A stretch of 64,000 nucleotides of DNA from positions 8,493,360-8,557,359 of the forward strand of contig NC_043019.1 of the NCBI RefSeq assembly GCF_006345805.1, read 5' to 3'. The notes under the pieces were generated by a model. The model made no database searches and was not told where the DNA came from. It saw only the letters and a program-made list of their open reading frames with translations. Every line of letters begins with the position of its first letter. The stretch's first letter is position 1. Positions 2,417 to 61,065 of the stretch are shown here, in pieces. Position numbers and translations under genes: made by a program. Source of the stretch: Octopus sinensis. Its lineage: Eukaryota.

Positions 2417-2958
2417 TGCCAACAAAAGAACGAGACCGATATGTAGATAGAGGAATTTATATATATATATGTTGACTTAAAATTTGAATGAAGATATAAG
2501 AAAATCGAAAATATGAACAAACACGCGGAGTTGCTAAATATACTTGGCGTATTTTCACAAATACGTGAATCATTATTAGAAGACTATTTAAATTGACTTT
2601 TACTAATATCACTAGTTCCTGATACTTCAGTTTTGATGTTGTGCGTTCGTCAGGTCTATATTCCCAGAAATATATTCATATATGTCACTTGCGTATAAGG
2701 AAAGTTTTCTCGTTTACAATATTAACTATATTTAAATTAACAATCTTATTTCTTCGTATAAATTAACGACCATTTATTTTTTATTTCGAGCTGCCAACAC
2801 TTCTGAACTAGCATATATTTTATATCTCCAATTAAGTAATTTTAAATAATGAAGTTTTTTTTTTCCCTGTGACATTAAACAGATCACTACATGTGTGCAT
2901 ATGTGTGTGTGCGTGTGTGTGCGTATATGCCTCTGTATGTATATGTATACACTCACAA

Positions 2959-16640: not shown

Positions 16641-17487
16641 ATATTCTACATTCGTTTCATTTTATGCACTGCCATATTTCTTCCGAACACACTGTGTGCA
16701 ACCACACACGCGCACACACACACACACACTGATGCTCACAAACATACAGACACAACACATACGCATTTGTGTGTGTTATATTTATACAGAATATTAATTT
16801 CCGTATATACACATACATATGTACATACGTGTATATGTGTGTGCACGTGTATGCATGTATATATGTATTTATATATAAATATATCTATATATTTATACAT
16901 ATATATATATATTTATATAAATATGTATATACGTACATACATACTTACATATATACATACATACATATGTTCATATGTATTTTCTTACATATATACATAC
17001 ACATAATTTAATATTAGCTGTGAATATAAATTAATTTAATTTGCACTAAATTGTTGAAATTATAAGAAAATATTGGCAAAGACTTAATTGTTCTTGGAAT
17101 ATATGAACTTGAATGATGAAATATGAACACCTGAGGTGATTTATAATTCTATGACAATTAACATAAATTAGAATTATATAAAATTAGACACTTTAGTAAA
17201 AATTTAATTTATATACATTTTCCCCTATCAGCGTATTTCCAATATATTTTGCAAAGAATATTATATTTGAAGGGATTTATCTTCAATATTCCTTCACTAC
17301 CAAACTTGGTTAATTTCCATAATATTATTTGAGAAAAATATATTCTGTGAGTCAATATAATATCAGCAATTTGATGTTGTTAAAACCCGTACCTGTTGGG
17401 GTCTGGAGTCGAGGTAATCGGTGATACTCCTCTTCAGAAATTCCTGGCCACGTGCCACAATGGGAAACCACTATATTATCAGGTATT

Positions 17488-17815
17488 AAGGCGGTGAGCT
17501 GGCAGAATCGTTAGCACGCCGGGCAAAATGCTTAGCGGTATTTCGTCTGCCGCTACGTTCTGAGTTCAATTTCCGCTGAGGTCGACTCTGCCTTTCATCC
17601 TATCGGAGTCGATTAAATAAGTACCAGTTACGCACTGGGGTCGATATAATCGACTTAATCCGTTTGTCTGTCCTTGTTTGTCCTCTCTGTGCTTAGCCCC
17701 TTGTGGGTAGTAAAGAAATAGGTACTTCATCTGACACTACATTCTGTGTTCCAGTTCCGCTGTTGACGATATCCCCTGTCGATAAAACAAGTCCGGTTGA
17801 ATACTGGGGTCGGAT
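17488..17815 (+). mobile_element. Full tRNA-derived SINE (17488-17720) followed by an older headless SINE body
   Basis: aaggcggtgagctggcagaatcgttagcacgccgggc head, B-box-like gagttcaatttcc, tail gtgggtagtaaagaaata, then ggtacttc and a degenerate second body. Confidence 0.92.
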
Positions 17816-24247: not shown

Positions 24248-24570
24248 TGCGTAACTGTTACTAATTTCATCGAGTCCGAAAGGATGAAAGGCCACGCTGG
24301 AATTTGAACTCAGAACACGAAGACGGACGAAATACCTATTTCTTTACTACCCACAAGGGGCTAAACACAGAGAGGACAAATAAGGACAGACAAATGGATT
24401 AAGTAGATTATATCGACCCCAGTGCGTAATTGGTTCTTAACTTATCGACCCCGAAAGGATGAAAGGCAAAGTCGACCTCGGCGGAATTTGAACTCAGAAC
24501 GTAGCGGCAGACGAAATACCGCTAAGCATTTTATCCGGTGTGCTATCGATTCTGTCAGCTCGCTGCCTTA
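24248..24570 (-). mobile_element. Full tRNA-derived SINE (24337-24570) joined to an older headless body (24248-24336)
   Basis: Reverse complement of the 17488 family; junction at gaaatacc 24329-24336. Confidence 0.92.
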
Positions 24571-24726
24571 ACATATGCACATAACAATCCTATGTGTAAT
24601 ACATACGAACAGAGACAGTAAAGAACGCATGCTGCTGCTCTACCACGACACACACACACACACGTGCAAGTTTATACTTGTACTACATGCATACATTCAT
24701 AAAGCAATCTAGGTAACAGGAAAGCC

Positions 24727-26389: not shown

Positions 26390-26560
26390 ATGGTATGTCG
26401 ATTACATCGAAACTAGTGTTTAACTGGGAATTATATCGATCCCAAAATGATAAAAGACAAATCCATTTCAACGAAATTTGGATACGGATCATAAAAAACG
26501 GACGAAATATCACTAAGCATTTTGTCCGGCATGCTAACGGTTCTACCAGCTTGTCGCCGG
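26390..26560 (-). mobile_element. Old degenerate copy of the abundant SINE
   Basis: gtcgattacatcga...cactaagcattttgtccggcatgctaacggttctaccagct. Confidence 0.75.
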
Positions 26561-32835: not shown

Positions 32836-33468
32836 TCAGAATATGTGGAGATGGACAGTCCTGGCTAAGAAGGAATATATTCACAGACATGACAGAGTTG
32901 GAACCTACATACATTGGAAGCTATGCCAACATTATGGAATAACAACAGAAAAAAATGGTATAGGCACACACCAGAAAAGGTCACAGAAAACGAGAAAGCA
33001 ACCATACTCTGGGATATGCCGATACACACAGGTAGAGAAATTAAGGCCAACAGACCAGATATAGTTGTCAGAGAGCATGAAGAAAAAAAATGCTTTCTAA
33101 TTGATGTATCAATACCGGCTGATGACAACGTGTCTCTAAAAGAAATGGAGAAACTCTCAAAATACAAAGACCTGGAAATAGAGGTAACTAGAATGTGGAA
33201 TCTGAAAACAGAAACAATTCCTATCATAGTAGGTGCATTAGGCACGATAAAAAAATATTCAGACAAATACATAACAAAAACACCAGGACTTACACACACA
33301 TATAACATACAGAAAATTGCACTACTAGGCACTGCACTCATCCTACGCAGAACACTTTCCATACAATAACCATCAGAGCATCACAACAAATCACAGCACA
33401 TACCCAAGGCACACAGAGCTGCGCTCGGTAGTGAAGTGAAAGCACGCTATAAAAATAAAACTACTGGA
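32836..33468 (+). mobile_element. 5'-truncated non-LTR retrotransposon with restriction-like endonuclease (R4/Dong type)
   Basis: LAKKEYIHRHDRVGTYIHWKLC, ILWDMPIHT, NRPDIVV, LIDVSIP, EKLSKYKDL, IIVGALG, KIALLGTALILRRTL*: an RHD motif plus PD-(D/E)xK domain. One frameshift in an A7 run (32949-32955), AATAAA at 33454-33459, (TAA)n on both sides. Confidence 0.93.
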
Positions 33469-34639: not shown

Positions 34640-34803
34640 CAGACCAGTAACTTCTAAAGAGATGATGAGTTGATTGCTTAGATCACGAAAGTTTGAAAGG
34701 TAAAGTCGACCTCGGTGACGTCTGAACTCAGAACATCAAGACCTATGAAATGGCGCTAGGTCTTGTAGCCGGCATGCTACCGGTTCTGCCAGACTGCCAT
34801 CTT
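34640..34803 (-). mobile_element. Degenerate SINE copy
   Basis: gaaaggtaaagtcgacctcgg...tgaactcagaac...ccggcatgctaccggttctgccag. Confidence 0.75.
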
Positions 34804-44109: not shown

Positions 44110-45055
44110 TAGATATATATATATATATATATACATACATAGATAGATAGATATCTTCTATCTCTCTCTGTCTCTCTCACTCTGTCTATATATATATATA
44201 TATATATATATACAAGCACACACATACATACGTATATATATACTTACGTACATATATATATCTCTCTTCCCTTTCCAGCCCTCGCTATCATGGAAATGTC
44301 AAGTAGTGGTTATTTTTTAAACGTATACATTTCGAGTAGATTCGCCTCGAAAATAAAGATACTATTGACAGAAATAAATGAACAATTTACAATAATACAA
44401 AAGATAGTGAAAAGTAAAGAAAAGTCAGTGTGTTGTTTCTTTCTTATTTTCTGTTCTTTTAATCTGTAATAAAGACAATAGTTCGTGTTGCAGCTTGATA
44501 AGATTCTTAGAAGAAGTTAGTCGTCTGGAAACAACTGACAGAAGACAATTTAATCGCTGTTGAAACTGTATCATTTCAGTTGAAATATCTTGAACGCCGG
44601 CCGTCGACCCTCAGGAAATAGGAAGAATATCTCCCTCAAACATTCCGTATTTTCTTGATACTGGCACGTTAGAAAATAAAGCTTGCGTTACATTTTATAT
44701 GTGAAAAAATGTAGACATGTCTGGAATGGTTTTTCTTATTACATGTTGGCTCAATTTCCATGTACAAGACAACAACTGAAATAGCAACTAACTTCAATGT
44801 TTCTTTTCAGGTGCATCGCCGTCGTCTCCATGTTGCTATTTCTTGCTTCGTTTTCTCTCCTGTCTGAAAACTATGACTGGACTTTATGTCACCACTTGCT
44901 AAGTCAATCAATAAATTCTTTTCTCTACCATGTTCCTTCTTTTCAGTTTCACAGTTAGGAATAGTAGTTCAATGGGTCATTATTTCTCATAGAGTGCGAA
45001 ACGCACTTAACCGATTGCCTTCACAGAGTTGCAGAGAAAAAGCGTTGGAAATTAT

Positions 45056-45106
<51 letters not shown>

Positions 45107-45432
45107 TATATATATATAATATATTATATATAAATTTTCCTCGAATGAGGCTTTTACATGCCGAAGACTACTTGGTGTAATTGATAATTATTCCAAATTA
45201 ATTAATTTCACCCTTCATTATTACGGATAACCATATTTTATCTCAGTAGATGACCACAGCATCTTGTTTTGGCTACACGCGGGTGGGAAGGGGCTGGTGA
45301 CACAATCGTTTCATTCACAAATTGAATTCGGTGATACTAGTTGCGGATTCTAGCAGCTCGCTCTGATACTGAGTTGAGTTGGTGCCTTCTAGTATCTCAA
45401 AATCAATATATAATCATTTATGATTATAGTAT

Positions 45433-45539
45433 TCTACGCTGAAGAGAAAAGAAGTTTCGGTAAGATAGAATTATTTAATATTTAATATTTAATTCTTATG
45501 CTTTCCTAAAAACTTGATTTCGAAACGTACGTCCGTAGA
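45433..45539 (+). ncRNA. Type I hammerhead ribozyme, copy 1, all core positions intact
   Basis: tctacg(45433-38)-CTGAAGA(45439-45)-stem II gaaa...tttc(45446-45521)-GAAA(45522-25)-CGTAC-GTC(45531-33)-cgtaga(45534-39). Confidence 0.9.
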
Positions 45540-46035
45540 TAACTTAAAAATGTATGATAGATTGCAGTCAATTCATTCTCTCTTACCTGTTTGTGTCTGC
45601 CTTCCAATTGCTGTTTTTACTGAGATCTCCCTTTTTAGTAGAAGAAATAGCTATAACCCTTTGACTGCTATTTCTAAATTCGGTATGTGGTAAGGCAATT
45701 CCTTGCTAAACCCTTTATTGCTTAGTATTACTTAAATTTTCCTCGAATGAGGCTTTTACATACCGAAGACTACTTGGTGTAATTGATAATTATTCCAAAT
45801 TAATTAATTTCACCCTTCATTATTACGGATAACCAACTATTTTATCTCAGTAGATGACCACAGCATCTTGTTTTGGCTACAACGCGGGTGGGAAGGGGCT
45901 GGTGACACAATCGTTTCATTCACAAATTGAATTCGGTGATACTAGTTGCGGATTCTAGCTCGCTCTGATACTGAGTTGAGTTGGTGCCTTCTAGTATCTC
46001 AAAATTCAATATATAATCATTTATGATTATAGTAT

Positions 46036-46140
46036 TCTACGCTGAAGAGAAAAGAAGTTTCGGTAAGATAGAATTATTTAATATTTAATATTTAATTCTT
46101 ATGCTTCCTAAAAACTTGATTTCGAACGTACGTCCGTAGA
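46036..46140 (+). ncRNA. Type I hammerhead ribozyme, copy 2 (reads GAA instead of GAAA)
   Basis: Same layout; CTGAAGA 46042-48, C17 at 46134. One A is missing from GAAA, either a mutation or a homopolymer sequencing error. Confidence 0.75.
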
Positions 46141-46650
46141 TAACTTAAAAATGTATGATAGATTGCAGTCAATTCATTCTCTCTTACCTGTTTGTGTCTG
46201 CCTTCCAATTGCTTTTTTACTGAGATCTCCCTTTTTAGTAGAAGAAATAGCTATAACCTTTGACTGCTATTTCTAAATTCGGTATGTGGTAAGGCAATTC
46301 CTTGCTAAACCCTTATTGCTTAGTATTACTTAAAATTTCCTCGAATGAGGCTTTGACATACCGAAGACTACTTGGTGTAATGATAATATTCCAAATATTA
46401 ATTAATTTCACCCGTCATTGTTAGTGGATAACCATATAATATTATACTAAAAGTAGAGACCACAGCATCTTGTTTTGGCTACACGCAGAGATGGGATAGA
46501 GGGCTGTGACACCAATCGTTTAATTCAGAAATTTGAATTCAGGTGATACTAGGTTGCGGGATCTAGGCTCGCTCATACTTGAGTTGGTGTGTGGTGGCCT
46601 TCTAGTATCTCAAAAATTCTTCCAATTATATCATGTATGATTATAGTTAT

Positions 46651-46771
46651 TCTAACTGAAGAGAAAAAGAAAGTTTATGTTCGGTTAAGATACATGAATT
46701 ATTTAATATATATAATATTAATATCTTATGCTATCCCTAAAAACTTGTTTCGAAACGTGTACGTCCGTAGA
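46651..46771 (+). ncRNA. Type I hammerhead ribozyme, copy 3 (degraded or noisy)
   Basis: CTGAAGA 46656-62, GAAA 46752-55, GTC ending at 46765. The stem I 5' strand reads tctaa and stem III has a GT insertion. Confidence 0.6.
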
Positions 46772-47007
46772 TAACTTAAAAATGGTATGTATATAGATCG
46801 CTGTATATTCATGTCTCTCTTACCTGTTGTGTGTCTGCCTATATATAATTTGCTGTTTTTACTGAGATCTCCCTTGTAGTATGAAGATATATATATATAT
46901 ATATATTTGATGCTATATATATAAATTGTGTGTATTGTGGTAAGGGTAATTCGTTGCTATAACCTTTATTGCTTAGTATATATATATATATATATATACT
47001 ATTAAAT

Positions 47008-47233
47008 TAGAGAGTGAATATACCACTATTAGGCAAATCCTACAATGAACAACTTAGCCCAATACTAAGTATTAATTAATTTATATGATTTTAAAATATA
47101 TCAAAATTATTAAAGAAAAAAAGATAAGTTTGATATTATTTAAATAATATAAATTAATTAATATATATCATGATTGGATGTATAACTTAAGTTTTTCATT
47201 GCATGTATTTGCCTAATAGTGGTTTTATCTCTA
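47008..47233. mobile_element. MITE with ~45-bp imperfect TIRs
   Basis: Perfect 16-bp core ccactattaggcaaat (47023-38) / atttgcctaatagtgg (47207-22); outer tagag.../...ctcta; AT-rich interior. Confidence 0.8.
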
Positions 47234-47502
47234 TTATATAAATTATTTTTTAAATATTTTTTATAATGGATTATTTTTAAATTTGATTTTTTTTGTAAGT
47301 TTGGTTTATTTTTAATATTTATTTATATCTATACTATCCTATATATAATATATATACAATAGATTTACCTATGTATAATGGATATTCTTGTTAATATAGA
47401 GAAGAAGACTAGCTGAGATATCTTTATAATTATATATATGAGTATATATATAGATATATATATATATAGATAGATAGGATAGATAGATATATAGATAGTT
47501 GG

Positions 47503-47715: not shown

Positions 47716-47868
47716 AATATATGGTAACGGTATACACAGCAATCCTCGAATCATGTTCATCTTCAATTTTGTAGAGATAATAATTGTTTTTAACTGCTAC
47801 ATTCATCATTAGAATGGATCAGATTGCGTTCCTGCGTCCCAGCTTTTTGCGCGAAGAAGAGAAATACC

Positions 47869-48100
47869 TATTTCTTTATTACCCACAAGGGGCTAGACAC
47901 AGAGGGGACAAACAAGGACAGACATAAGTATTAAGTCGATTACATCGACCCCAGTGCGTAACTGGTACTTAATTTATCGACCCCGAAAGGATGAAAGGCA
48001 AAGTCGACCTCGGCGGAATTTGAACTCACAACGTAACGCAGACGAAATACGGCTACGCATTTCGCCCGGCGTGCTAACGCTTCTGCCAGCTCGCCGCCTT
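47869..48100 (-). mobile_element. Young full-length SINE with 16-bp TSD
   Basis: TSD gaagaagagaaatacc at 47853-47868 and 48102-48117. Confidence 0.95.
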
Positions 48101-48700
48101 AGAAGAAGAGAAATACCGAGATGTTATCTTCAGCTTGCTAACTATTGGAAAATTAAGTTGAACAGTAATGGAATCACTATCGTTTCTTCCTTCACAGCAA
48201 TGAACAATTCGATTGCATGAATATTGATATGTTGTAGTGAAATGGTAGAAGTGCTTATTCTGATAAAGTTAGAATTATTATCGAATTGTGAAAGATATGT
48301 GAGTATGAGCTGCAATTAATGGAGAATGCTGATAGATATTAACTGTTAGTTGTGATCTAAACAGGCTAATGTAATAGAATACTTTTAATAATTGATTGTA
48401 AAGACAGATCCGAGATTGTTAATAATTGTTACAGCAAAACTGTTAAATTAGTTAATGTCAAACCACTTAATTCTGAAAATTACAGTCTGATAAAAGACTT
48501 CTTATACATTACTCACGGATAAAATTTCATTGGCAAGTAGCACGTTGCATTTCCTATTTAATTTTGATGAAAAACGATATTATTTATCAGCTCTGGCCTG
48601 GAGAGTCACGTGTGAATTCAAACTTAAACGCTGTAAGGCAAAACTTTATAAAATGTATTTTCCTTAAGGTATATTTGATGCAAATTTTCAGGATGTTATT

Positions 48701-48933
48701 TATCTCTTTAGTGCCCACAGGAGGCTAAACATAGAGGAGGCAAATAAGGACAGACAAAGTGATTAAGTCGATTATATCGACTCCATTGCCTAACTGGTAC
48801 TTATTTAATCGACCCCGAAGGGATGAAAGGCAAAGTCGACCCCGGCGGAATTTGAACTCAGAACGTAACGGCAGCTGAAATAACGCTAAGCATTCCAGCC
48901 GGCGTGCTAACGATTCTGCTAGCTCACCGCCTT
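48701..48933 (-). mobile_element. Full-length SINE with ~19-bp TSD
   Basis: TSD aaatttt(t)caggatgttatt at 48682-48700 and 48934-48953. Confidence 0.92.
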
Positions 48934-50932
48934 AAATTTTTCAGGATGTTATTGAAAGATTATTCTGACATCAGTGAAGCCTAGCTTCTATATGCTCTGA
49001 AAGAAAATAAGAAAAAATATATGAGTGTTTGTTTTCAAAATATGCATGCTGTTTGTGTTGTTATATGGTTGTGAAATGCTGACTTTTATTAAATATATTC
49101 GAGTAGAGAGTAGAAACAAAACTCAATGTTTAAATTTCATCTGACAAATGAAATATTCAAGTGAAAGTTTAGGAAATTATTGATCTGACATCATGGCGAT
49201 AAACACACTTAATGCGTGCCAATATGCAGAAGGCAATTGCACGGAAGACGCAGAAGTGAACGGAGAGGCAGAAACAGGAAATCCCATAATAACAACAATC
49301 CGTTCAAACACTAAACTTGAAACTGAGTTTGGTTTTTTCAATGGTTTTTTCAATGATGCCATTGTTAACGGTCCAAGAGGCCTCCAACATTAACAAGTAA
49401 ACGTTATATGAAGTGATATATGTCTCTCAAACACGAAAAATATTTGAAACTCTGTTCCCGAAAATCCAGATAAGAAATATTTCTAGCAAACACAAAATTC
49501 TCTGGTAGTTGCTGCAGCAAATCCACCAGAGGGACACACCGGATGACGAGTGAAATTATAAGTAATTTGCCTGCTTTGATAAATTCTTCAAAAGAAATTA
49601 TAATTTCAAACTTGATAATGGTTCTCTTCTTCCATTCATTGTTTTTCTCTTTATATACATACATACATATATATATATATATAATATATATATATCAGAC
49701 GAATTTCTCAAACATAATTATTGAATTACTGAACCTTAAGATAGGTCACGCATTGTCACACAATCAAGCCCTGTCTAAATTTAGCGAAAGCACACCAAGG
49801 ACTATCTACTGTACTGACATTTTTTTTTGTTTTGCCTGTGTTTTCTTTCAGTGTTTTTGTTTGCGAATTGTGCGAAAGCGTTCGTAGGCTGGAATAATTT
49901 TGAGAACCAAGGTAACTCTGAAAGATGGTGTAGAGAAATTTATCGATAAATGACGCAGAGGCTATCCAGGGGTAACAGCAGTATTTAGAAATCTTCAGTT
50001 CCCAACATCAAGGTTTTCAAATAACTGGGTGTTATATCGGTAAAACGTTTAAACAGGATCTTGTTTTTACATATTTAAGGAACCCTTTGTAGATCAAAAG
50101 CAATTGTTTGGCTAAGAAATTTATATTCCGAAACAATGATGTCTTCAACTGCGCCGCATATCTTTGTCTTTGTCCGTCTTCAGTCTGTATGTATCTCTCT
50201 CTCTTTCTCCCTTTCATTCTCTCCCTCCTGCGCTCTTTTTTCCTCCCCTTCTCTCTCTCTCTCTTTATCTATCTATCTTTCTATCTCTACCTCTCTCGCT
50301 CGCTTTCTCCGGGTGTACTGGGCGTGATATATATTGGAGAAGTGCCTGTAAGAATGTGCCAAGTCAAAGTTGTTGCCGGTTCTAAGAATTAAATACATAC
50401 AGGATCGTACACACATATAGATCTTCTTACGATTGCCTGACCATATGAGAGTGTATGTATGCATTTATGTGTATATACAAATATGCATATGTACATGTAT
50501 ATATATATATGTGTGTTTATATGTGCATGTATGTATCTCCCTCTCTCTCTCTCTCTCTCTCTCTAAATATATATATATATATATATGCATGTATGCATAC
50601 GTATATATAGGTATATATATCTACATACATATATGTCTATGTGTAAGACTGTGCAATTGTGCATAGGTATGTGCGTGTGGGTACTTCAGATGCCACATTT
50701 CAACACAGCATTAACACACATCAATTTCCACAGCGTACTCGCACGGGACGGCCTCCCATAAAAGAGTACACGTCATTTCCTTTTCCCATATCCAAATATG
50801 TGTTTTCTTTATTTCACTTATTACGTTTCAACCGTTCACTCAGTCCATCTTTAATGTTTATTGGAGGACATCAACCTAAGAAGATAAATGAGATATTCAG
50901 CTAATGTAGGGGAATGCATAATCCATTCTCAT

Positions 50933-54039: not shown

Positions 54040-54341
54040 GTAAAATTAACCTGGCTGTACAGCTGGTACTTATTTTATGGACCTCAAAACTATGAAAGGT
54101 ACAATCGACCGCAGCGAAATTTGAAATCAGAATGTAAGTTCAGGAGAAATACCTATTTCTTTACTACCCACAAGGGGCTAAACACAGAGAGGACAAACAA
54201 ACTGGTACTTAATTTATCGACTCCGAAAGGATGAAAGGCAAAGTCGACCTCGGCGGAATTTGAACATAGAACGTAACGGCAGACGAAATACCGCAAAGCA
54301 TTTCGCACGACGTGCTAACGGTTCTGCCAGCTCGCCGCCTT
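54040..54341 (-). mobile_element. Young internally deleted SINE (54154-54341) joined to an older headless body (54040-54153)
   Basis: Junction gaaatacc at 54146-54153. Confidence 0.9.
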
Positions 54342-58743: not shown

Positions 58744-60740
58744 ACTGAGAGGAATGTTGTTAGGATTTAAAATAGTAATTTTCTAAACTGACATTTATTC
58801 CCAGACGGACTGCAACAAATGCTTACACTCAAGTATGCTTGCGCAATCGCAAACACACACACACGTAGACACATGTTCACTAACTCATCCACAGCAGTAT
58901 TCCGTACGGTTTATCTTTAAGAAATTCACTAACAATACAATCGACGTCCCACGGGAAGCCCTGCACAGACTGCCTCGCACTAAAACTGACACAAAATACC
59001 TCAAATATTCAAAGTAATCTATTAAACCACAAAATCTAAACTGTATATATTACACATAATATTTGATATCTTATATCTATCTGGAAGGTAAATCGAGTTG
59101 GAAATGTAAATAAATTCACTTTCAACAACGGAATGCTATAACGCCATCAATTTTGCAATAACTTTTCAGAGAATGTTCTTTTTCGCCGTCAGATAATGGA
59201 GAATTTTATTTTTATGTCTGGTTTTATTTATATGGAAAACTTTCATGAAGAGGTCTGGTCTATAAAATAATTGACTCTGTTGAAATGGTTTTCACTTCGT
59301 ACATTGACAATTGCTGACGTCGTTATTGACTGATTGATCTGTTTAACCCAGTGTCAGCCGTCATCGAAGCCATTAATGTGAAAATTCGCTTCAATCTGAT
59401 CTTCATTCCCTCTTTCAGATGTAACGAACCTCAAACTACGTTAGCAGTCTTTCTCTTCCATATTATAACAGCAATGTGAAGTGAGTTACATTTGATGGCT
59501 ATTTCGTGTATATTTGTTTTTCCCAAGAATGTGGTGTTTGCCTCTTAGTTGATAACGCCGTTCAATGTTCTTCTTGAATGCATATATAGAAATACACTGC
59601 CAGTAACTTCTTATCGATTTTACTGCCATTTCTTATAAATCTAGCATGAAATAAAAACTATATATAGTATCCCATAGAAAACAATTTGTTTTGATAAATT
59701 CAACGGAATGCTCAATATAAAAAAAATATTATTGTATAAAATGAATTGCGATATGATATAGATTATAGTTTTTCAGGACCAGAACAATAATCTCTGATTG
59801 TGGTATAAAAATTGAATTTTAAGTCTTATCACTTTCATTTTCATCAAGATTTCCACCTACGTAGATACAGAATGAATTACCAAGAAACGCTAATCTTTCA
59901 AACAATCCAATGTTCAAAGATCTTTGTCGAGCCATAGGCATTTTGAATTTCGCTGTTTTGGTCCCAGTAATTGAATGACCAACTACAAAAGATTAAGTTA
60001 AAATTCAAATGATGTCATCTGACCATCCTCTGATATCTATAGGGACTCTACTGTAAGAGAAACATAAACAGTCAGGTATGCAAACACTCTTAAATGTATA
60101 TTCACATACAATTTAATAAACAAATTACGAAAGAGCTGCTGCTAGTACTTTCATGATTTTTACCATCCTTGAAAGAGGCAGATTTACGGAACACTCCAGG
60201 AATCTCCAAGCTGTCTTTCAGACTCTTTTTATGCTTTATATCTATTTTGAAATTGGGAAACGGAACTGTGCGAAATTGAGAATCACCACATATCTTTCTT
60301 CCCGTGTGTCTTTTCTCGTTTGCTCACCGTCCAGCGACATCCTTTAAAAATCAACGCATAAACAGAGCCTGGAAGATTGGTTGGAGCCACAGGGCATCTT
60401 TTATAAATCTGCCTGTTTAGGCTCTTTCGTAACTTGTGTGTTAGATTAATATCTATCTTTCATTAGATTATTAGTTTTCTTTTTGGTTCCACCTACTTTC
60501 TAAACGTTCATTTCACGAACCACTACTTGACGTAAAGTTCAACATAGTGTTTAAAGCTTACTTTAAAGCTTAAAGAGGACATACTTGGTTTATAGAGAAG
60601 ATTTTGTTCGACGCACCATCACATTTATAATCCCACTCCACTAGATCTGTATTATATTCAATACCTTACAACTAATAAAATGCAAAGTTGAAACCTTTGT
60701 GAGGTGAAATATTACCACAAAACATTATAACTAAGTGAAT

Positions 60741-61065
60741 AAGGCGGCGAGCTGGCAGAAGCGTTAGCACGCCGGGCGAAATGCTTAGCGGTATGTTGTC
60801 TGCTGCTACGTTCTGAGTTCAAATTCCGCTGAGGTCGACTTTGCCTTTCATCCTTTCAGAGTCGATTAAATTACTACCAGTTCCTGGGGTCGAATTGATC
60901 CGTTTGTCTGTCCTTGTTTGTCCCCTCTGTGTTTAGCCCCTTGTGGGTAGTAAAGAAATAGGTATTTCGTCAGTCTTTACTTTCTGAGTTCAAATTCCGC
61001 CGAGGTTGACTTTGCCTTTCACCCTCCCCAGAAATTTCGGGCCTTGTGCCTAGAGTAGAAAAGAA
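60741..61065 (+). mobile_element. Full SINE (60741-60960) followed by an older headless body
   Basis: Tail gtagtaaagaaata, then ggtatttc (60961-68) and a second body. Confidence 0.92.

What the first reader, a model, noticed from the sequence alone, without database searches (positions are those of the whole stretch)
45131..46977. Tandem ~600-bp hammerhead-ribozyme array: candidate retrozyme or circular-RNA system
Seen: three head-to-tail non-coding units with a hammerhead at the same position in each. Predicted cleavage falls after 45533, 46134 and 46765, giving monomers of 601 and ~631 nt. The array starts and ends away from the cleavage site and sits between (AT)n runs. Established: metazoan non-LTR retrozymes and hammerhead satellites (newt satellite 2, Schistosoma SM-alpha, Dolichopoda repeats) are tandem type I hammerhead units whose multimeric transcripts self-cleave into monomers that can circularise; described units are generally shorter than this. 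Inference: this is a cephalopod retrozyme-like element with an unusually large monomer, inserted by reverse transcription of a multimeric or circular RNA into a (TA)n site. I do not know of a description of this family but cannot search.
Basis: partly seen in the sequence, partly recalled or inferred. Interest (0 to 1): 0.92.

Follow-up and report, generated by a model that had tools for sequence, protein, structure and literature searches.

The report
Three-unit hammerhead retrozyme-like tandem repeat
A short tandem repeat of three ~600-base non-coding units, each with a self-cleaving "hammerhead" RNA motif (intact in only one unit), most likely a partly decayed copy of a known class of parasitic elements (animal retrozymes) in an animal lineage where that class has not yet been described.

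Summary
Only unit 1 has a complete type I hammerhead: helix I 6 bp, helix II 4 bp closed by G10.1-C11.1, helix III 2 bp with palindromic GUAC loop, GUC site. Loop 2 is replaced by a ~68-nt hairpin extension, and Rfam does not detect the motif. Unit 2 lacks one A of the GAAA core. Unit 3 has a disrupted helix I. A motif with all these canonical features occurred in 0 of 3,050 shuffled windows.

Best reading: a non-LTR retrozyme, a non-autonomous element probably dependent on Penelope-like elements, inserted in a (TA)n microsatellite and partly decayed or mis-assembled.

- The monomer is not unusually large (published range 51-972 bp).
- Origin from multimeric or circular RNA is not shown. Units 1 and 2 are near-identical and the array ends are in phase, which points to DNA-level duplication or defined termini.
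- The cephalopod host is unverified.

No other copy could be retrieved, so family status, conservation and expression are untested. It is a new member of a known kind, of moderate interest.

The parts
45053..45130 (.). Left (TA)n microsatellite that abuts the first unit; presumed half of the target tract
   Evidence: TRF row 45053-45132, period 2; pure (TA)n runs listed; sequence
45131..45732 (+). Unit 1 (602 nt, 34.6% GC), the only unit with a complete hammerhead
   Evidence: Direct-repeat families D2-D9; alignment and blastn; GC
45433..45539 (+). Type I hammerhead of unit 1. Helix I 45433-45438 pairs with 45534-45539 (6 bp). Core CUGAAGA 45439-45445. Helix II hairpin 45446-45521 (4 bp closed by G10.1-C11.1, a 2x2 internal loop, then a ~68-nt extension). 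G12-A14 45522-45524. Helix III 45525-45532 (A15.1-U16.1, C-G, loop GUAC; ACGUACGU is an 8-nt palindrome). C17 at 45533, with predicted cleavage after it.
   Evidence: Descriptor scan: the single strict hit in the window, 0 of 100 and then 0 of 3,050 shuffles with the canonical extras. The MFE fold recovers helices I and II. The full hammerhead fold is -20.0 against an MFE of -21.1 kcal/mol, and the palindrome self-duplex is -9.8 kcal/mol.
45733..46330 (+). Unit 2 (598 nt); differs from unit 1 by 1 substitution and 9 indel events
46036..46140 (+). Hammerhead-like motif of unit 2. Helices I and II are intact, but the core reads GAAC (46124-46127) where unit 1 has GAAAC. GUC is at 46132-46134. 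Predicted inactive as assembled. The missing A lies in a homopolymer and could be an assembly error.
46331..46977 (+). Unit 3 (647 nt, 32% GC). About 81% identical to unit 1 when gaps are counted. The divergence is dominated by indels, with internal (TA)n at 46887-46923.
46650..46771 (+). Hammerhead-like motif of unit 3. Core CUGAAGA 46656-46662 and GAAAC 46752-46756 are kept. Helix III is lengthened to 3 bp with a UGUA loop. GUC is at 46763-46765. The base of helix I is disrupted (UCUAA where unit 1 has UCUACG).
   Evidence: hammerhead-like fold -13.4 against an MFE of -19.0 kcal/mol
46978..46999 (.). Right (TA)n microsatellite that abuts the last unit
45534..46134 (+). Predicted 601-nt monomer RNA, if both flanking hammerheads cleaved (this needs the unit 2 core to be intact in reality)
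   Evidence: Coordinates. Its fold is z = -4.9 to -6.8, but that is not exceptional for this window.

Best explanation
The locus is a short genomic array of a non-LTR retrozyme. This is a non-coding, non-autonomous retroelement whose unit carries a type I hammerhead ribozyme. It was most likely mobilised by the reverse transcriptase and GIY-YIG endonuclease of a Penelope-like element (PLE), which prefers (TA)n targets.

Inferred life cycle, by analogy with described animal retrozymes:
1. Read-through or Pol II transcription of the + strand gives a multimeric RNA.
2. Hammerheads of neighbouring units, each with a weak 2-bp helix III, pair through the ACGUACGU palindrome into a double hammerhead and cut after GUC. 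[quoted passage not shown]
3. A host tRNA ligase circularises the monomers.
4. A PLE enzyme copies the RNA back into (TA)n DNA, starting at a defined internal site, not at the ribozyme site.

This particular copy is partly decayed or mis-assembled: only unit 1 has a complete ribozyme. At least the unit 1 / unit 2 pair arose by a recent DNA-level duplication and not by retrotransposition.

Shown here: the tandem anatomy, the motif anatomy and its non-random nature, the (TA)n context and the absence of coding capacity. Inferred: transcription, cleavage, circularisation, the PLE partner and the existence of a family.
For: Three in-register non-coding units. Unit 1 has exactly the canonical metazoan type I architecture quoted by Cervera & de la Pena 2014: helix I of 6 bp, helix II of 4 bp, helix III of 1-2 bp with a 2-4-nt palindromic loop. 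It also has G10.1-C11.1, A15.1-U16.1 and GUC. Such a motif occurred in 0 of 3,050 dinucleotide shuffles of the window. The hammerhead fold is within 1.1 kcal/mol of the MFE, and the 8-nt palindrome gives a -9.8 kcal/mol intermolecular helix III. Both helices have 2x2 internal loops at the distances where loops 1 and 2 normally sit (read directly). GC is 34%, no ORF exceeds 66 aa, and there is no Pfam domain; these match the definition of non-LTR retrozymes. The unit length lies within the published 51-972 bp range, and 75% of families have at most 7 units. (TA)n at both ends has P of about 0.004, and (TA)n is a stated preferred target of PLEs. Array ends away from the cleavage site fit PLE reverse transcription starting at defined internal sites, with no need for hammerhead cleavage. 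Mussel retrozyme hammerheads also lack the archetypal loop-loop nucleotides.
Against: No second locus could be found, so multi-copy status, conservation and covariation are untested. Rfam hammerhead models do not match, even at E<=10. Only 1 of 3 motifs is complete, which fails the 'two consecutive complete HHRs' criterion. Helix II carries a ~68-nt extension for which I found no documented precedent. The strong fold of the monomer is not distinctive: random segments of the window give z = -2.9 +/- 3.6. The window holds no PLE RT or GIY-YIG remnant and no inverted truncated copy. The near-identity of u1 and u2 and the in-phase ends favour DNA-level amplification of the tandem over a multimeric cDNA.
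Confidence: 0.6

Rival explanations
1. A single hammerhead-bearing element (a solo retrozyme, SINE-like unit or PLE-derived fragment with defined ends) was inserted once into a (TA)n tract. It then became a three-unit array purely at the DNA level, by unequal exchange or replication slippage. The tandem arrangement would then say nothing about multimeric or circular RNA intermediates.
For: The array is 3.0 units, with start and end in the same phase to within 6 nt. The unit junction ATTACT resembles a decayed (TA)3 (note). u1 and u2 differ by one substitution while u3 differs from them by 30-49, so at least one duplication is recent and local. The surrounding DNA is microsatellite-rich and prone to slippage: 158 (TA)>=5 runs.
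Against: In-phase ends are also expected if the element's ends are set by defined reverse-transcription start sites, as in PLEs. Tandem dimers and multimers are the normal genomic form of retrozymes. ATTACT differs from (TA)3 at 2 of 6 positions.
Confidence: 0.25
2. Part of the picture is an assembly artefact. The copy number, and many of the differences between units (including the core defects of units 2 and 3), would come from unpolished long-read consensus. The real locus would then have a different number of near-identical units.
For: The indel-to-substitution ratios are abnormal: 9 indel events against 1 substitution for u1-u2, and 48 against 49 for u1-u3. Of the 48, 36 are insertions in u3 and many are single bases next to the same base. 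The missing A of u2 lies in an A-run.
Against: u3 also carries 30-49 true substitutions and internal (TA)n expansions, which are typical of real decay. The repeat has unique flanks on both sides. No reads are available to test this.
Confidence: 0.15
3. The array is what remains of the pseudo-LTRs of an autonomous Penelope-like element whose coding region was lost.
For: PLE pLTRs carry hammerheads, form partial tandems and favour (TA)n. The cleavage site lies 199 nt from the unit's 3' boundary, in line with hammerheads near PLE 3' ends.
Against: The units join seamlessly with no trace of RT or GIY-YIG sequence. There is no adjacent inverted 5'-truncated copy. Metazoan PLE hammerheads are mostly minimal variants that lack helix III, whereas this one has canonical proportions.
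Confidence: 0.1
4. The hammerhead is a chance match within an ordinary AT-rich tandem duplication and has no ribozyme ancestry.
For: Rfam does not recognise it. The bare descriptor has a chance rate of 0.0075 per window, which means hundreds of hits per Gb-scale genome. Helix II is atypically long. Thermodynamic support is weak: z = -1.29 for the motif.
Against: With the canonical extras (6-bp helix I, G10.1-C11.1, GUC, palindromic loop 3) there were 0 hits in 3,050 shuffles. The motif lies in the classic context of a tandem repeat. The core blocks CUGAAGA, GAAAC and GUC, and the 3' strand of helix I, are retained in the diverged unit 3.
Confidence: 0.05

Closest known systems
Metazoan non-LTR retrozymes (Acropora, Mytilus galloprovincialis, Ambystoma; Cervera & de la Pena 2020, PMC7229834; vertebrate survey, bioRxiv 10.64898/2026.07.22.740005)
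   Same: Head-to-tail non-coding repeats, low GC, and one type I hammerhead per unit with a weak, palindromic helix III. There are no LTR, PBS or PPT. Short arrays (most families have at most 7 units). As in mussel, the archetypal loop-loop nucleotides are absent.
   Different: The unit (~600 nt) is larger than the 170-400 nt of the characterised invertebrate families, though it lies inside the 51-972 bp range of the 2026 survey. Loop 2 is replaced by a ~68-nt hairpin extension. Only one unit has a complete motif. Expression, circles and copy number are unknown.
Hammerhead satellites: newt satellite 2, Dolichopoda pDo500, Schistosoma Sm-alpha (named from my own knowledge and)
   Same: Tandem units with a type I hammerhead. 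The weak helix III implies cleavage as a double hammerhead, as shown for newt. To my recollection the Dolichopoda units are ~500 bp, which is close to this size.
   Different: Those are large satellite arrays or very abundant families. Here there are three units at one locus, and abundance is unknown.
Pseudo-LTRs of Penelope-like elements (Cervera & de la Pena 2014, PMC4209133; Craig et al. 2021, PMC8557442; Frangieh et al. 2024, PMC11167929)
   Same: Hammerhead inside a directly repeated non-coding segment, (TA)n target preference, and insertion ends that do not coincide with the ribozyme site.
   Different: No RT or GIY-YIG ORF between the repeats and no inverted truncated copy. The hammerhead has canonical proportions, unlike the minimal variants.

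Membership tests
Hammerhead ribozyme, type I (canonical metazoan form) | Conserved core C3-U-G-A-N-G-A9 ... G12-A-A14 ... U16.1-H17 | tested here: met
   Unit 1: CUGAAGA 45439-45445, GAA 45522-45524, U16.1 45532, C17 45533. Unit 3 keeps the core. Unit 2 lacks one A (GAAC) and fails.
Hammerhead ribozyme, type I (canonical metazoan form) | Three helices around the core with helix I open; G10.1-C11.1 and A15.1-U16.1 pairs | tested here: met
   Unit 1 has helix I of 6 bp, helix II of 4 bp closed by G-C, and helix III with A-U and C-G pairs. This is not met in unit 3, where the base of helix I is disrupted.
Hammerhead ribozyme, type I (canonical metazoan form) | Helix I 6 bp, helix II 4 bp, helix III 1-2 bp capped by a 2-4-nt palindromic loop | tested here: met
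   Unit 1 is 6/4/2 bp with loop GUAC, and ACGUACGU is an 8-nt palindrome. The departure is that helix II continues past a 2x2 internal loop into a ~68-nt extension where a terminal loop 2 is expected.
Hammerhead ribozyme, type I (canonical metazoan form) | Loop 1 - loop 2 tertiary-contact nucleotides | tested here: inconclusive
   Internal loops lie at the right distances (after 6 bp in helix I and after 4 bp in helix II), but the archetypal nucleotides are not recognisable. Mussel retrozyme hammerheads lack them too.
Hammerhead ribozyme, type I (canonical metazoan form) | Match to the Rfam Hammerhead covariance models | tested here: not met
   No hit at gathering score over the window, nor at E<=10 on 45000-47100. 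The long helix II insertion is the probable cause, but that is an inference I could not test.
Hammerhead ribozyme, type I (canonical metazoan form) | Site-specific self-cleavage | not testable with these tools
   Needs in vitro transcription of monomeric and dimeric constructs.
Non-LTR retrozyme | Head-to-tail tandem repeat of at least 2 non-coding units without LTR, PBS or PPT | tested here: met
   Three units in register. The longest ORF is 66 aa and there is no Pfam domain.
Non-LTR retrozyme | [quoted passage not shown] | tested here: not met
   Only unit 1 passes the descriptor; units 2 and 3 fail even the relaxed one. The unit 2 defect is a 1-nt homopolymer deletion that may be an assembly error.
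Non-LTR retrozyme | Low GC content (<45-50%) | tested here: met
   32-35% GC; definition. The whole window is also 34% GC, so this does not discriminate.
Non-LTR retrozyme | Unit length within the described range | tested here: met
   598-647 nt, against 51-972 bp in the 2026 survey. This is above the 150-400 nt of earlier reports.
Non-LTR retrozyme | Multi-copy family dispersed in the genome | not testable with these tools
   One locus in 64 kb. No animal genome collection is available. Protein-word, exact-DNA and exact-ORF searches all came back empty.
Non-LTR retrozyme | Expression as linear and circular monomer RNAs | not testable with these tools
   No transcriptome access.
Non-LTR retrozyme | Co-occurrence with autonomous PLEs in the same genome | not tested
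   No RT or GIY-YIG in this window. PLEs are reported in Octopus and squid genomes, but the host of this window is unverified.
Penelope-like element pseudo-LTR | RT plus GIY-YIG ORF between the direct repeats | tested here: not met
   The units abut directly, and no Pfam domain is found in ORF fragments of the neighbourhood or the rest of the window.
Penelope-like element pseudo-LTR | Adjacent inverted 5'-truncated copy (frequent, not obligatory) | tested here: not met
   blastn of the unit against both strands of the window finds only the three direct units.
Penelope-like element pseudo-LTR | Insertion bias for microsatellites such as (TA)n | tested here: met
   (TA)n abuts both ends, P about 0.004; the bias is described.
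Hammerhead satellite DNA (newt satellite 2 type) | Long arrays of many units | tested here: not met
   Three units bounded by unrelated sequence on both sides.

The most novel reading that the evidence does not exclude
This locus is one copy of a live, cephalopod-specific retrozyme family that produces unusually large (~600-nt) circular RNAs. Their hammerhead has replaced loop 2 with a ~70-nt structured arm, a ribozyme variant that current covariance models and descriptors miss. In that case retrozymes and hammerheads would be systematically under-counted in such genomes.
Probability: 0.2. Interest if true: 0.55.

Novelty: new member of a known kind. Interest (0 to 1): 0.35.

Why it matters
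If the family is real and active, it would extend retrozymes (genome-encoded, ribozyme-processed circular RNAs) to a lineage where none has been described. It would also add a hammerhead with a long helix II arm that Rfam does not detect, so standard annotation would under-count such elements. The (TA)n context and the defined, in-phase ends would give one more data point linking animal retrozymes to the integration machinery of Penelope-like elements. On its own, a three-unit, partly broken copy is an ordinary piece of repeat annotation.

Tried and rejected
(1) Rfam at gathering score and at E<=10 on the region gave no ribozyme family. The weak hits (YrlA, MH_s25, mir-297, pestivirus UTR) are AT-rich chance matches.

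(2) TRF cannot see the array because its period limit is 500.

(3) Whole-monomer folding looked striking at first (z = -4.9 to -6.8). I rejected it as evidence because random 601-nt segments of the window reach z = -9.9 (mean -2.9, sd 3.6) and the minus strand gives -4.3.

(4) A six-frame translation of the unit was used as bait for mis-called ORFs in 5.8 billion proteins. It returned 8,000 word candidates and no hit. The candidate list may have been capped.

(5) Exact-pattern scans with four conserved blocks against metagenome, viral and prokaryotic genome collections all returned 0. That was expected, because these collections hold hardly any animal DNA.

(6) Exact-identity look-ups of three window ORFs found nothing on record.

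(7) Host identification through the LINE-like ORF gave hits in many marine invertebrates, and the best ones sit on anonymous ENA contigs, so it was not diagnostic.

(8) Pfam on all non-low-complexity ORF fragments of at least 55 aa in the window found nothing, so no PLE query was available to fetch host PLE termini.

(9) I ran no further search on a shorter bait, because the chance of success was low for the cost.

(10) Lunse et al. 2017, on dimeric PLE hammerheads, is not held in the library.
Full report
OBSERVATION.
The region 45131-46977 holds three head-to-tail copies of a ~600-nt unit. The repeat finder reports nine direct-repeat families with start-to-start spacings of 598-605 nt. A global alignment and blastn place the units at 45131-45732 (u1, 602 nt), 45733-46330 (u2, 598 nt) and 46331-46977 (u3, 647 nt). 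The 64-kb window has no further copy on either strand. TRF missed the array only because its longest period is 500.

The array lies exactly between two (TA)n tracts, 45053-45130 and 46978-46999. The window is rich in such tracts: 158 pure (TA)>=5 runs cover 5% of it. Even so, only 0.4-0.5% of random 1.85-kb segments have one within 6 nt of both ends.

The units are 32-35% GC. Their longest stop-to-stop ORF is 66 aa, and they give no Pfam hit.

IS THERE A HAMMERHEAD?
Rfam says no, both at gathering thresholds over the window and at E<=10 on the region alone. I therefore tested the motif with an explicit descriptor: CUGANGA, helix II of at least 4 bp spanning up to 130 nt, GAAA, helix III of at least 2 bp with A15.1-U16.1, H17, and helix I of at least 5 bp.

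It finds exactly one site on both strands of the window, in u1. The layout there is:
- helix I: 45433-45438 pairs with 45534-45539 (6 bp)
- core CUGAAGA: 45439-45445
- helix II: opens at G10.1 (45446) and closes at C11.1 (45521)
- G12-A14: 45522-45524
- helix III: A15.1-U16.1 and C-G around a GUAC loop
- C17: 45533

This is the architecture that Cervera & de la Pena 2014 give for canonical metazoan type I hammerheads: helix I of 6 bp, helix II of 4 bp, and helix III of 1-2 bp capped by a 2-4-nt palindromic loop.

The bare descriptor is not rare enough to stand alone. It gave 23 hits in 3,050 dinucleotide shuffles, or 0.0075 per window, which would be hundreds of hits in a Gb-scale genome. I then required features that were not in the descriptor: helix I of at least 6 bp, G10.1-C11.1, GUC and a palindromic loop 3. 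None of the 3,050 shuffles had such a motif.

The MFE fold of the 123-nt motif recovers helix I and a long imperfect helix II hairpin. The complete hammerhead secondary structure costs only 1.1 kcal/mol more than the MFE. ACGUACGU is an 8-nt palindrome whose self-duplex is -9.8 kcal/mol, whereas the monomeric helix III hairpin is not stable. This is the arrangement of the double hammerheads of newt and PLE ribozymes.

The unusual feature is helix II. After the canonical 4 bp there is a 2x2 internal loop and then a ~68-nt extension, where a terminal loop 2 would normally be. That extension is the probable reason for the Rfam miss, but I could not test this inference. The motif's fold is not thermodynamically remarkable (z = -1.29).

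THE OTHER TWO COPIES.
- u2 keeps helices I and II as its MFE structure, but it reads GAAC where u1 has GAAAC. One invariant A, or the A15.1-U16.1 pair, is therefore lost.
- u3 keeps CUGAAGA, GAAAC and GUC, and even gains a third helix III pair. But the 5' strand of helix I reads UCUAA where u1 has UCUACG. Its best hammerhead-like fold is 5.6 kcal/mol above its MFE.

As assembled, the locus fails the operational criterion for an active retrozyme, which is two consecutive units with complete motifs.

HOW THE UNITS DIFFER.
u1 and u2 differ by one substitution and nine indel events. Six of those events are single bases added next to the same base.

u1 and u3 differ by 30-49 substitutions, depending on gap penalties, and by about 48 indel events. 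Of these, 36 are insertions in u3.

Indels this frequent relative to substitutions are not what ordinary sequence decay produces. They suggest an unpolished long-read consensus, microsatellite-type slippage, or both. Two things follow:
- The core defect of u2 may not be real.
- The near-identity of u1 and u2 beside a clearly older u3 means that at least one unit arose by a recent local DNA-level duplication, or by an assembly effect, and not by a single integration of a trimeric cDNA.

ARRAY PHASE.
The array begins at TAAATTTTCC and ends at CTTAGT, and the internal junctions read CTTAGT-ATTACT-TAAATTTT. The array is therefore three whole units minus 6 nt, with its start and end in the same phase (note). 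Random ends of a rolling-circle cDNA would coincide this closely only about 2-3% of the time.

Two readings fit:
- The element has defined termini. This would match Frangieh et al. 2024, who showed that a PLE reverse transcriptase initiates at defined internal sites of the element RNA. In that study genomic insertion ends fell on those sites, hammerhead cleavage was not needed for insertion in vitro, and no reads ended at the hammerhead site.
- One unit was inserted and then amplified at the DNA level.

I cannot decide between them from one locus.

CONTROLS THAT REMOVED APPARENT EVIDENCE.
The 601-nt monomer folds much better than its shuffles, with z between -4.9 and -6.8. Random 601-nt segments of this microsatellite-rich window give z = -2.9 +/- 3.6 with a minimum of -9.9, and the minus strand of the monomer gives -4.3. 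The "highly self-paired" property of retrozyme RNAs therefore cannot be claimed here.

SURROUNDINGS.
Pfam found no domain in any non-low-complexity ORF fragment of at least 55 aa in the whole window. In particular there is no reverse transcriptase or GIY-YIG endonuclease next to the array, and no inverted truncated copy of the unit.

The window carries:
- at least eight copies of a ~250-bp SINE-like repeat, two of them 0.9-1.9 kb downstream of the array
- one LINE-type RT C-terminal fragment at 32914-33369, with relatives in many marine invertebrates
- no tRNA genes and no Rfam families

The host could not be identified. That is a lead, not a test.

SEARCH FOR OTHER COPIES.
None of the available collections holds animal genomes. 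All of the following returned nothing:
- a six-frame translation of the unit against 5.8 billion predicted proteins
- exact scans with four conserved blocks against metagenome, viral and prokaryotic contigs
- exact-identity look-ups of ORFs

Family size, conservation of the core, covariation in the helices and expression therefore remain untested. This is the main weakness of every interpretation given here.

COMPARISON WITH WHAT IS KNOWN.
The anatomy matches non-LTR retrozymes as defined by Cervera & de la Pena 2020: tandem repeats from dimers to multimers, low GC, no LTR/PBS/PPT, and one type I hammerhead per unit.

Those authors characterised units of 170-400 nt. A 2026 survey reports family consensus lengths of 51-972 bp, with a mean of 650 bp in ray-finned fishes and at most seven units in 75% of families. 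[quoted passage not shown] A ~600-nt unit in a three-unit array is thus within the known range.

The (TA)n context agrees with the microsatellite target bias of PLEs. PLEs are present in octopus and squid genomes. The giant squid genome paper already lists 235 Rfam Hammerhead_1 loci.

I found no description of retrozymes in cephalopods in the searchable literature or in the one held supplement.

The locus is not a PLE pseudo-LTR in the strict sense, because no ORF lies between the repeats. It is not a satellite of the newt type either, because it has only three units.

MECHANISM.
My best estimate, at about 0.6, is as follows.
1. The family is transcribed as multimers from the + strand. Two T5 runs per unit would stop Pol III, by established knowledge, so Pol II or read-through transcription is more likely.
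2. Adjacent hammerheads pair through the palindrome into a double hammerhead and cut after GUC.
3. The ~600-nt monomers are circularised by a host tRNA ligase, as shown for coral, mussel and axolotl elements.
4. A PLE enzyme integrates copies into (TA)n.

Every step after the sequence anatomy is inferred by analogy. This particular copy is probably inert or nearly so.

VERDICT.
The claims of unusual size and of an origin from multimeric RNA are not upheld. This is most likely a new member of a known kind, and it is worth a genome-wide follow-up mainly because its long helix II makes it invisible to standard hammerhead models.

Noticed in passing
window 17486-17760, 24299-24571, 26394-26558, 34686-34792, 47859-48101, 48701-48935, 54093-54341, 60740-61000: A SINE-like repeat of ~240-280 bp occurs at least eight times at 72-91% identity, in both orientations (one copy read). 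From memory it resembles the abundant tRNA-derived SINE of Octopus genomes. ARAGORN calls no tRNA in it.
   Followed up: partly
window 32914-33369 (+): A 151-aa ORF is the conserved C-terminal region of a LINE-type reverse transcriptase. It has 767 database relatives at E<=1e-5. The best are 82% identical on short anonymous ENA contigs, and others are 55-65% identical to proteins of Exaiptasia, Holothuria, Montipora and Styela. There is no Pfam hit, and an overlapping 165-aa ORF lies on the opposite strand.
   Followed up: partly
window 46988-47257: An AT-rich imperfect inverted repeat lies directly after the array. Its arms are 46988-47038 and 47207-47257 (71% complementary, with a perfect 16-nt core CCACTATTAGGCAAAT) and are 168 nt apart. 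It may be a MITE-like element or only AT-rich palindromy.
   Followed up: no
window 45131-46977: The differences between the repeat units are dominated by short indels: 9 events against 1 substitution for u1-u2, and 48 against 49 for u1-u3, mostly single-base insertions in u3. This pattern suggests an unpolished long-read consensus in this stretch of the assembly.
   Followed up: partly
whole window: Microsatellite load is extreme: 158 pure (TA)>=5 runs (5% of bases) plus many (TG)n, (TC)n and (TCTA)n tracts. No Rfam family at gathering score, no tRNA, and no Pfam domain in ORF fragments of at least 55 aa across 64 kb. The window looks entirely intergenic or intronic.
   Followed up: yes
window 2519-2653 (-): A relaxed hammerhead-descriptor hit (helix I 3 bp, helix II 3 bp, helix III 7 bp) is at chance level, with 0.15 expected per window.
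   Followed up: yes
window 45470-45495 (inside helix II of unit 1): The tip of the helix II extension contains about three copies of a 7-nt AT-only motif (ATTTAAT / ATATTTA). Part of the long arm may therefore have grown by slippage after the ribozyme arose. Unit 3 differs here.
   Followed up: no
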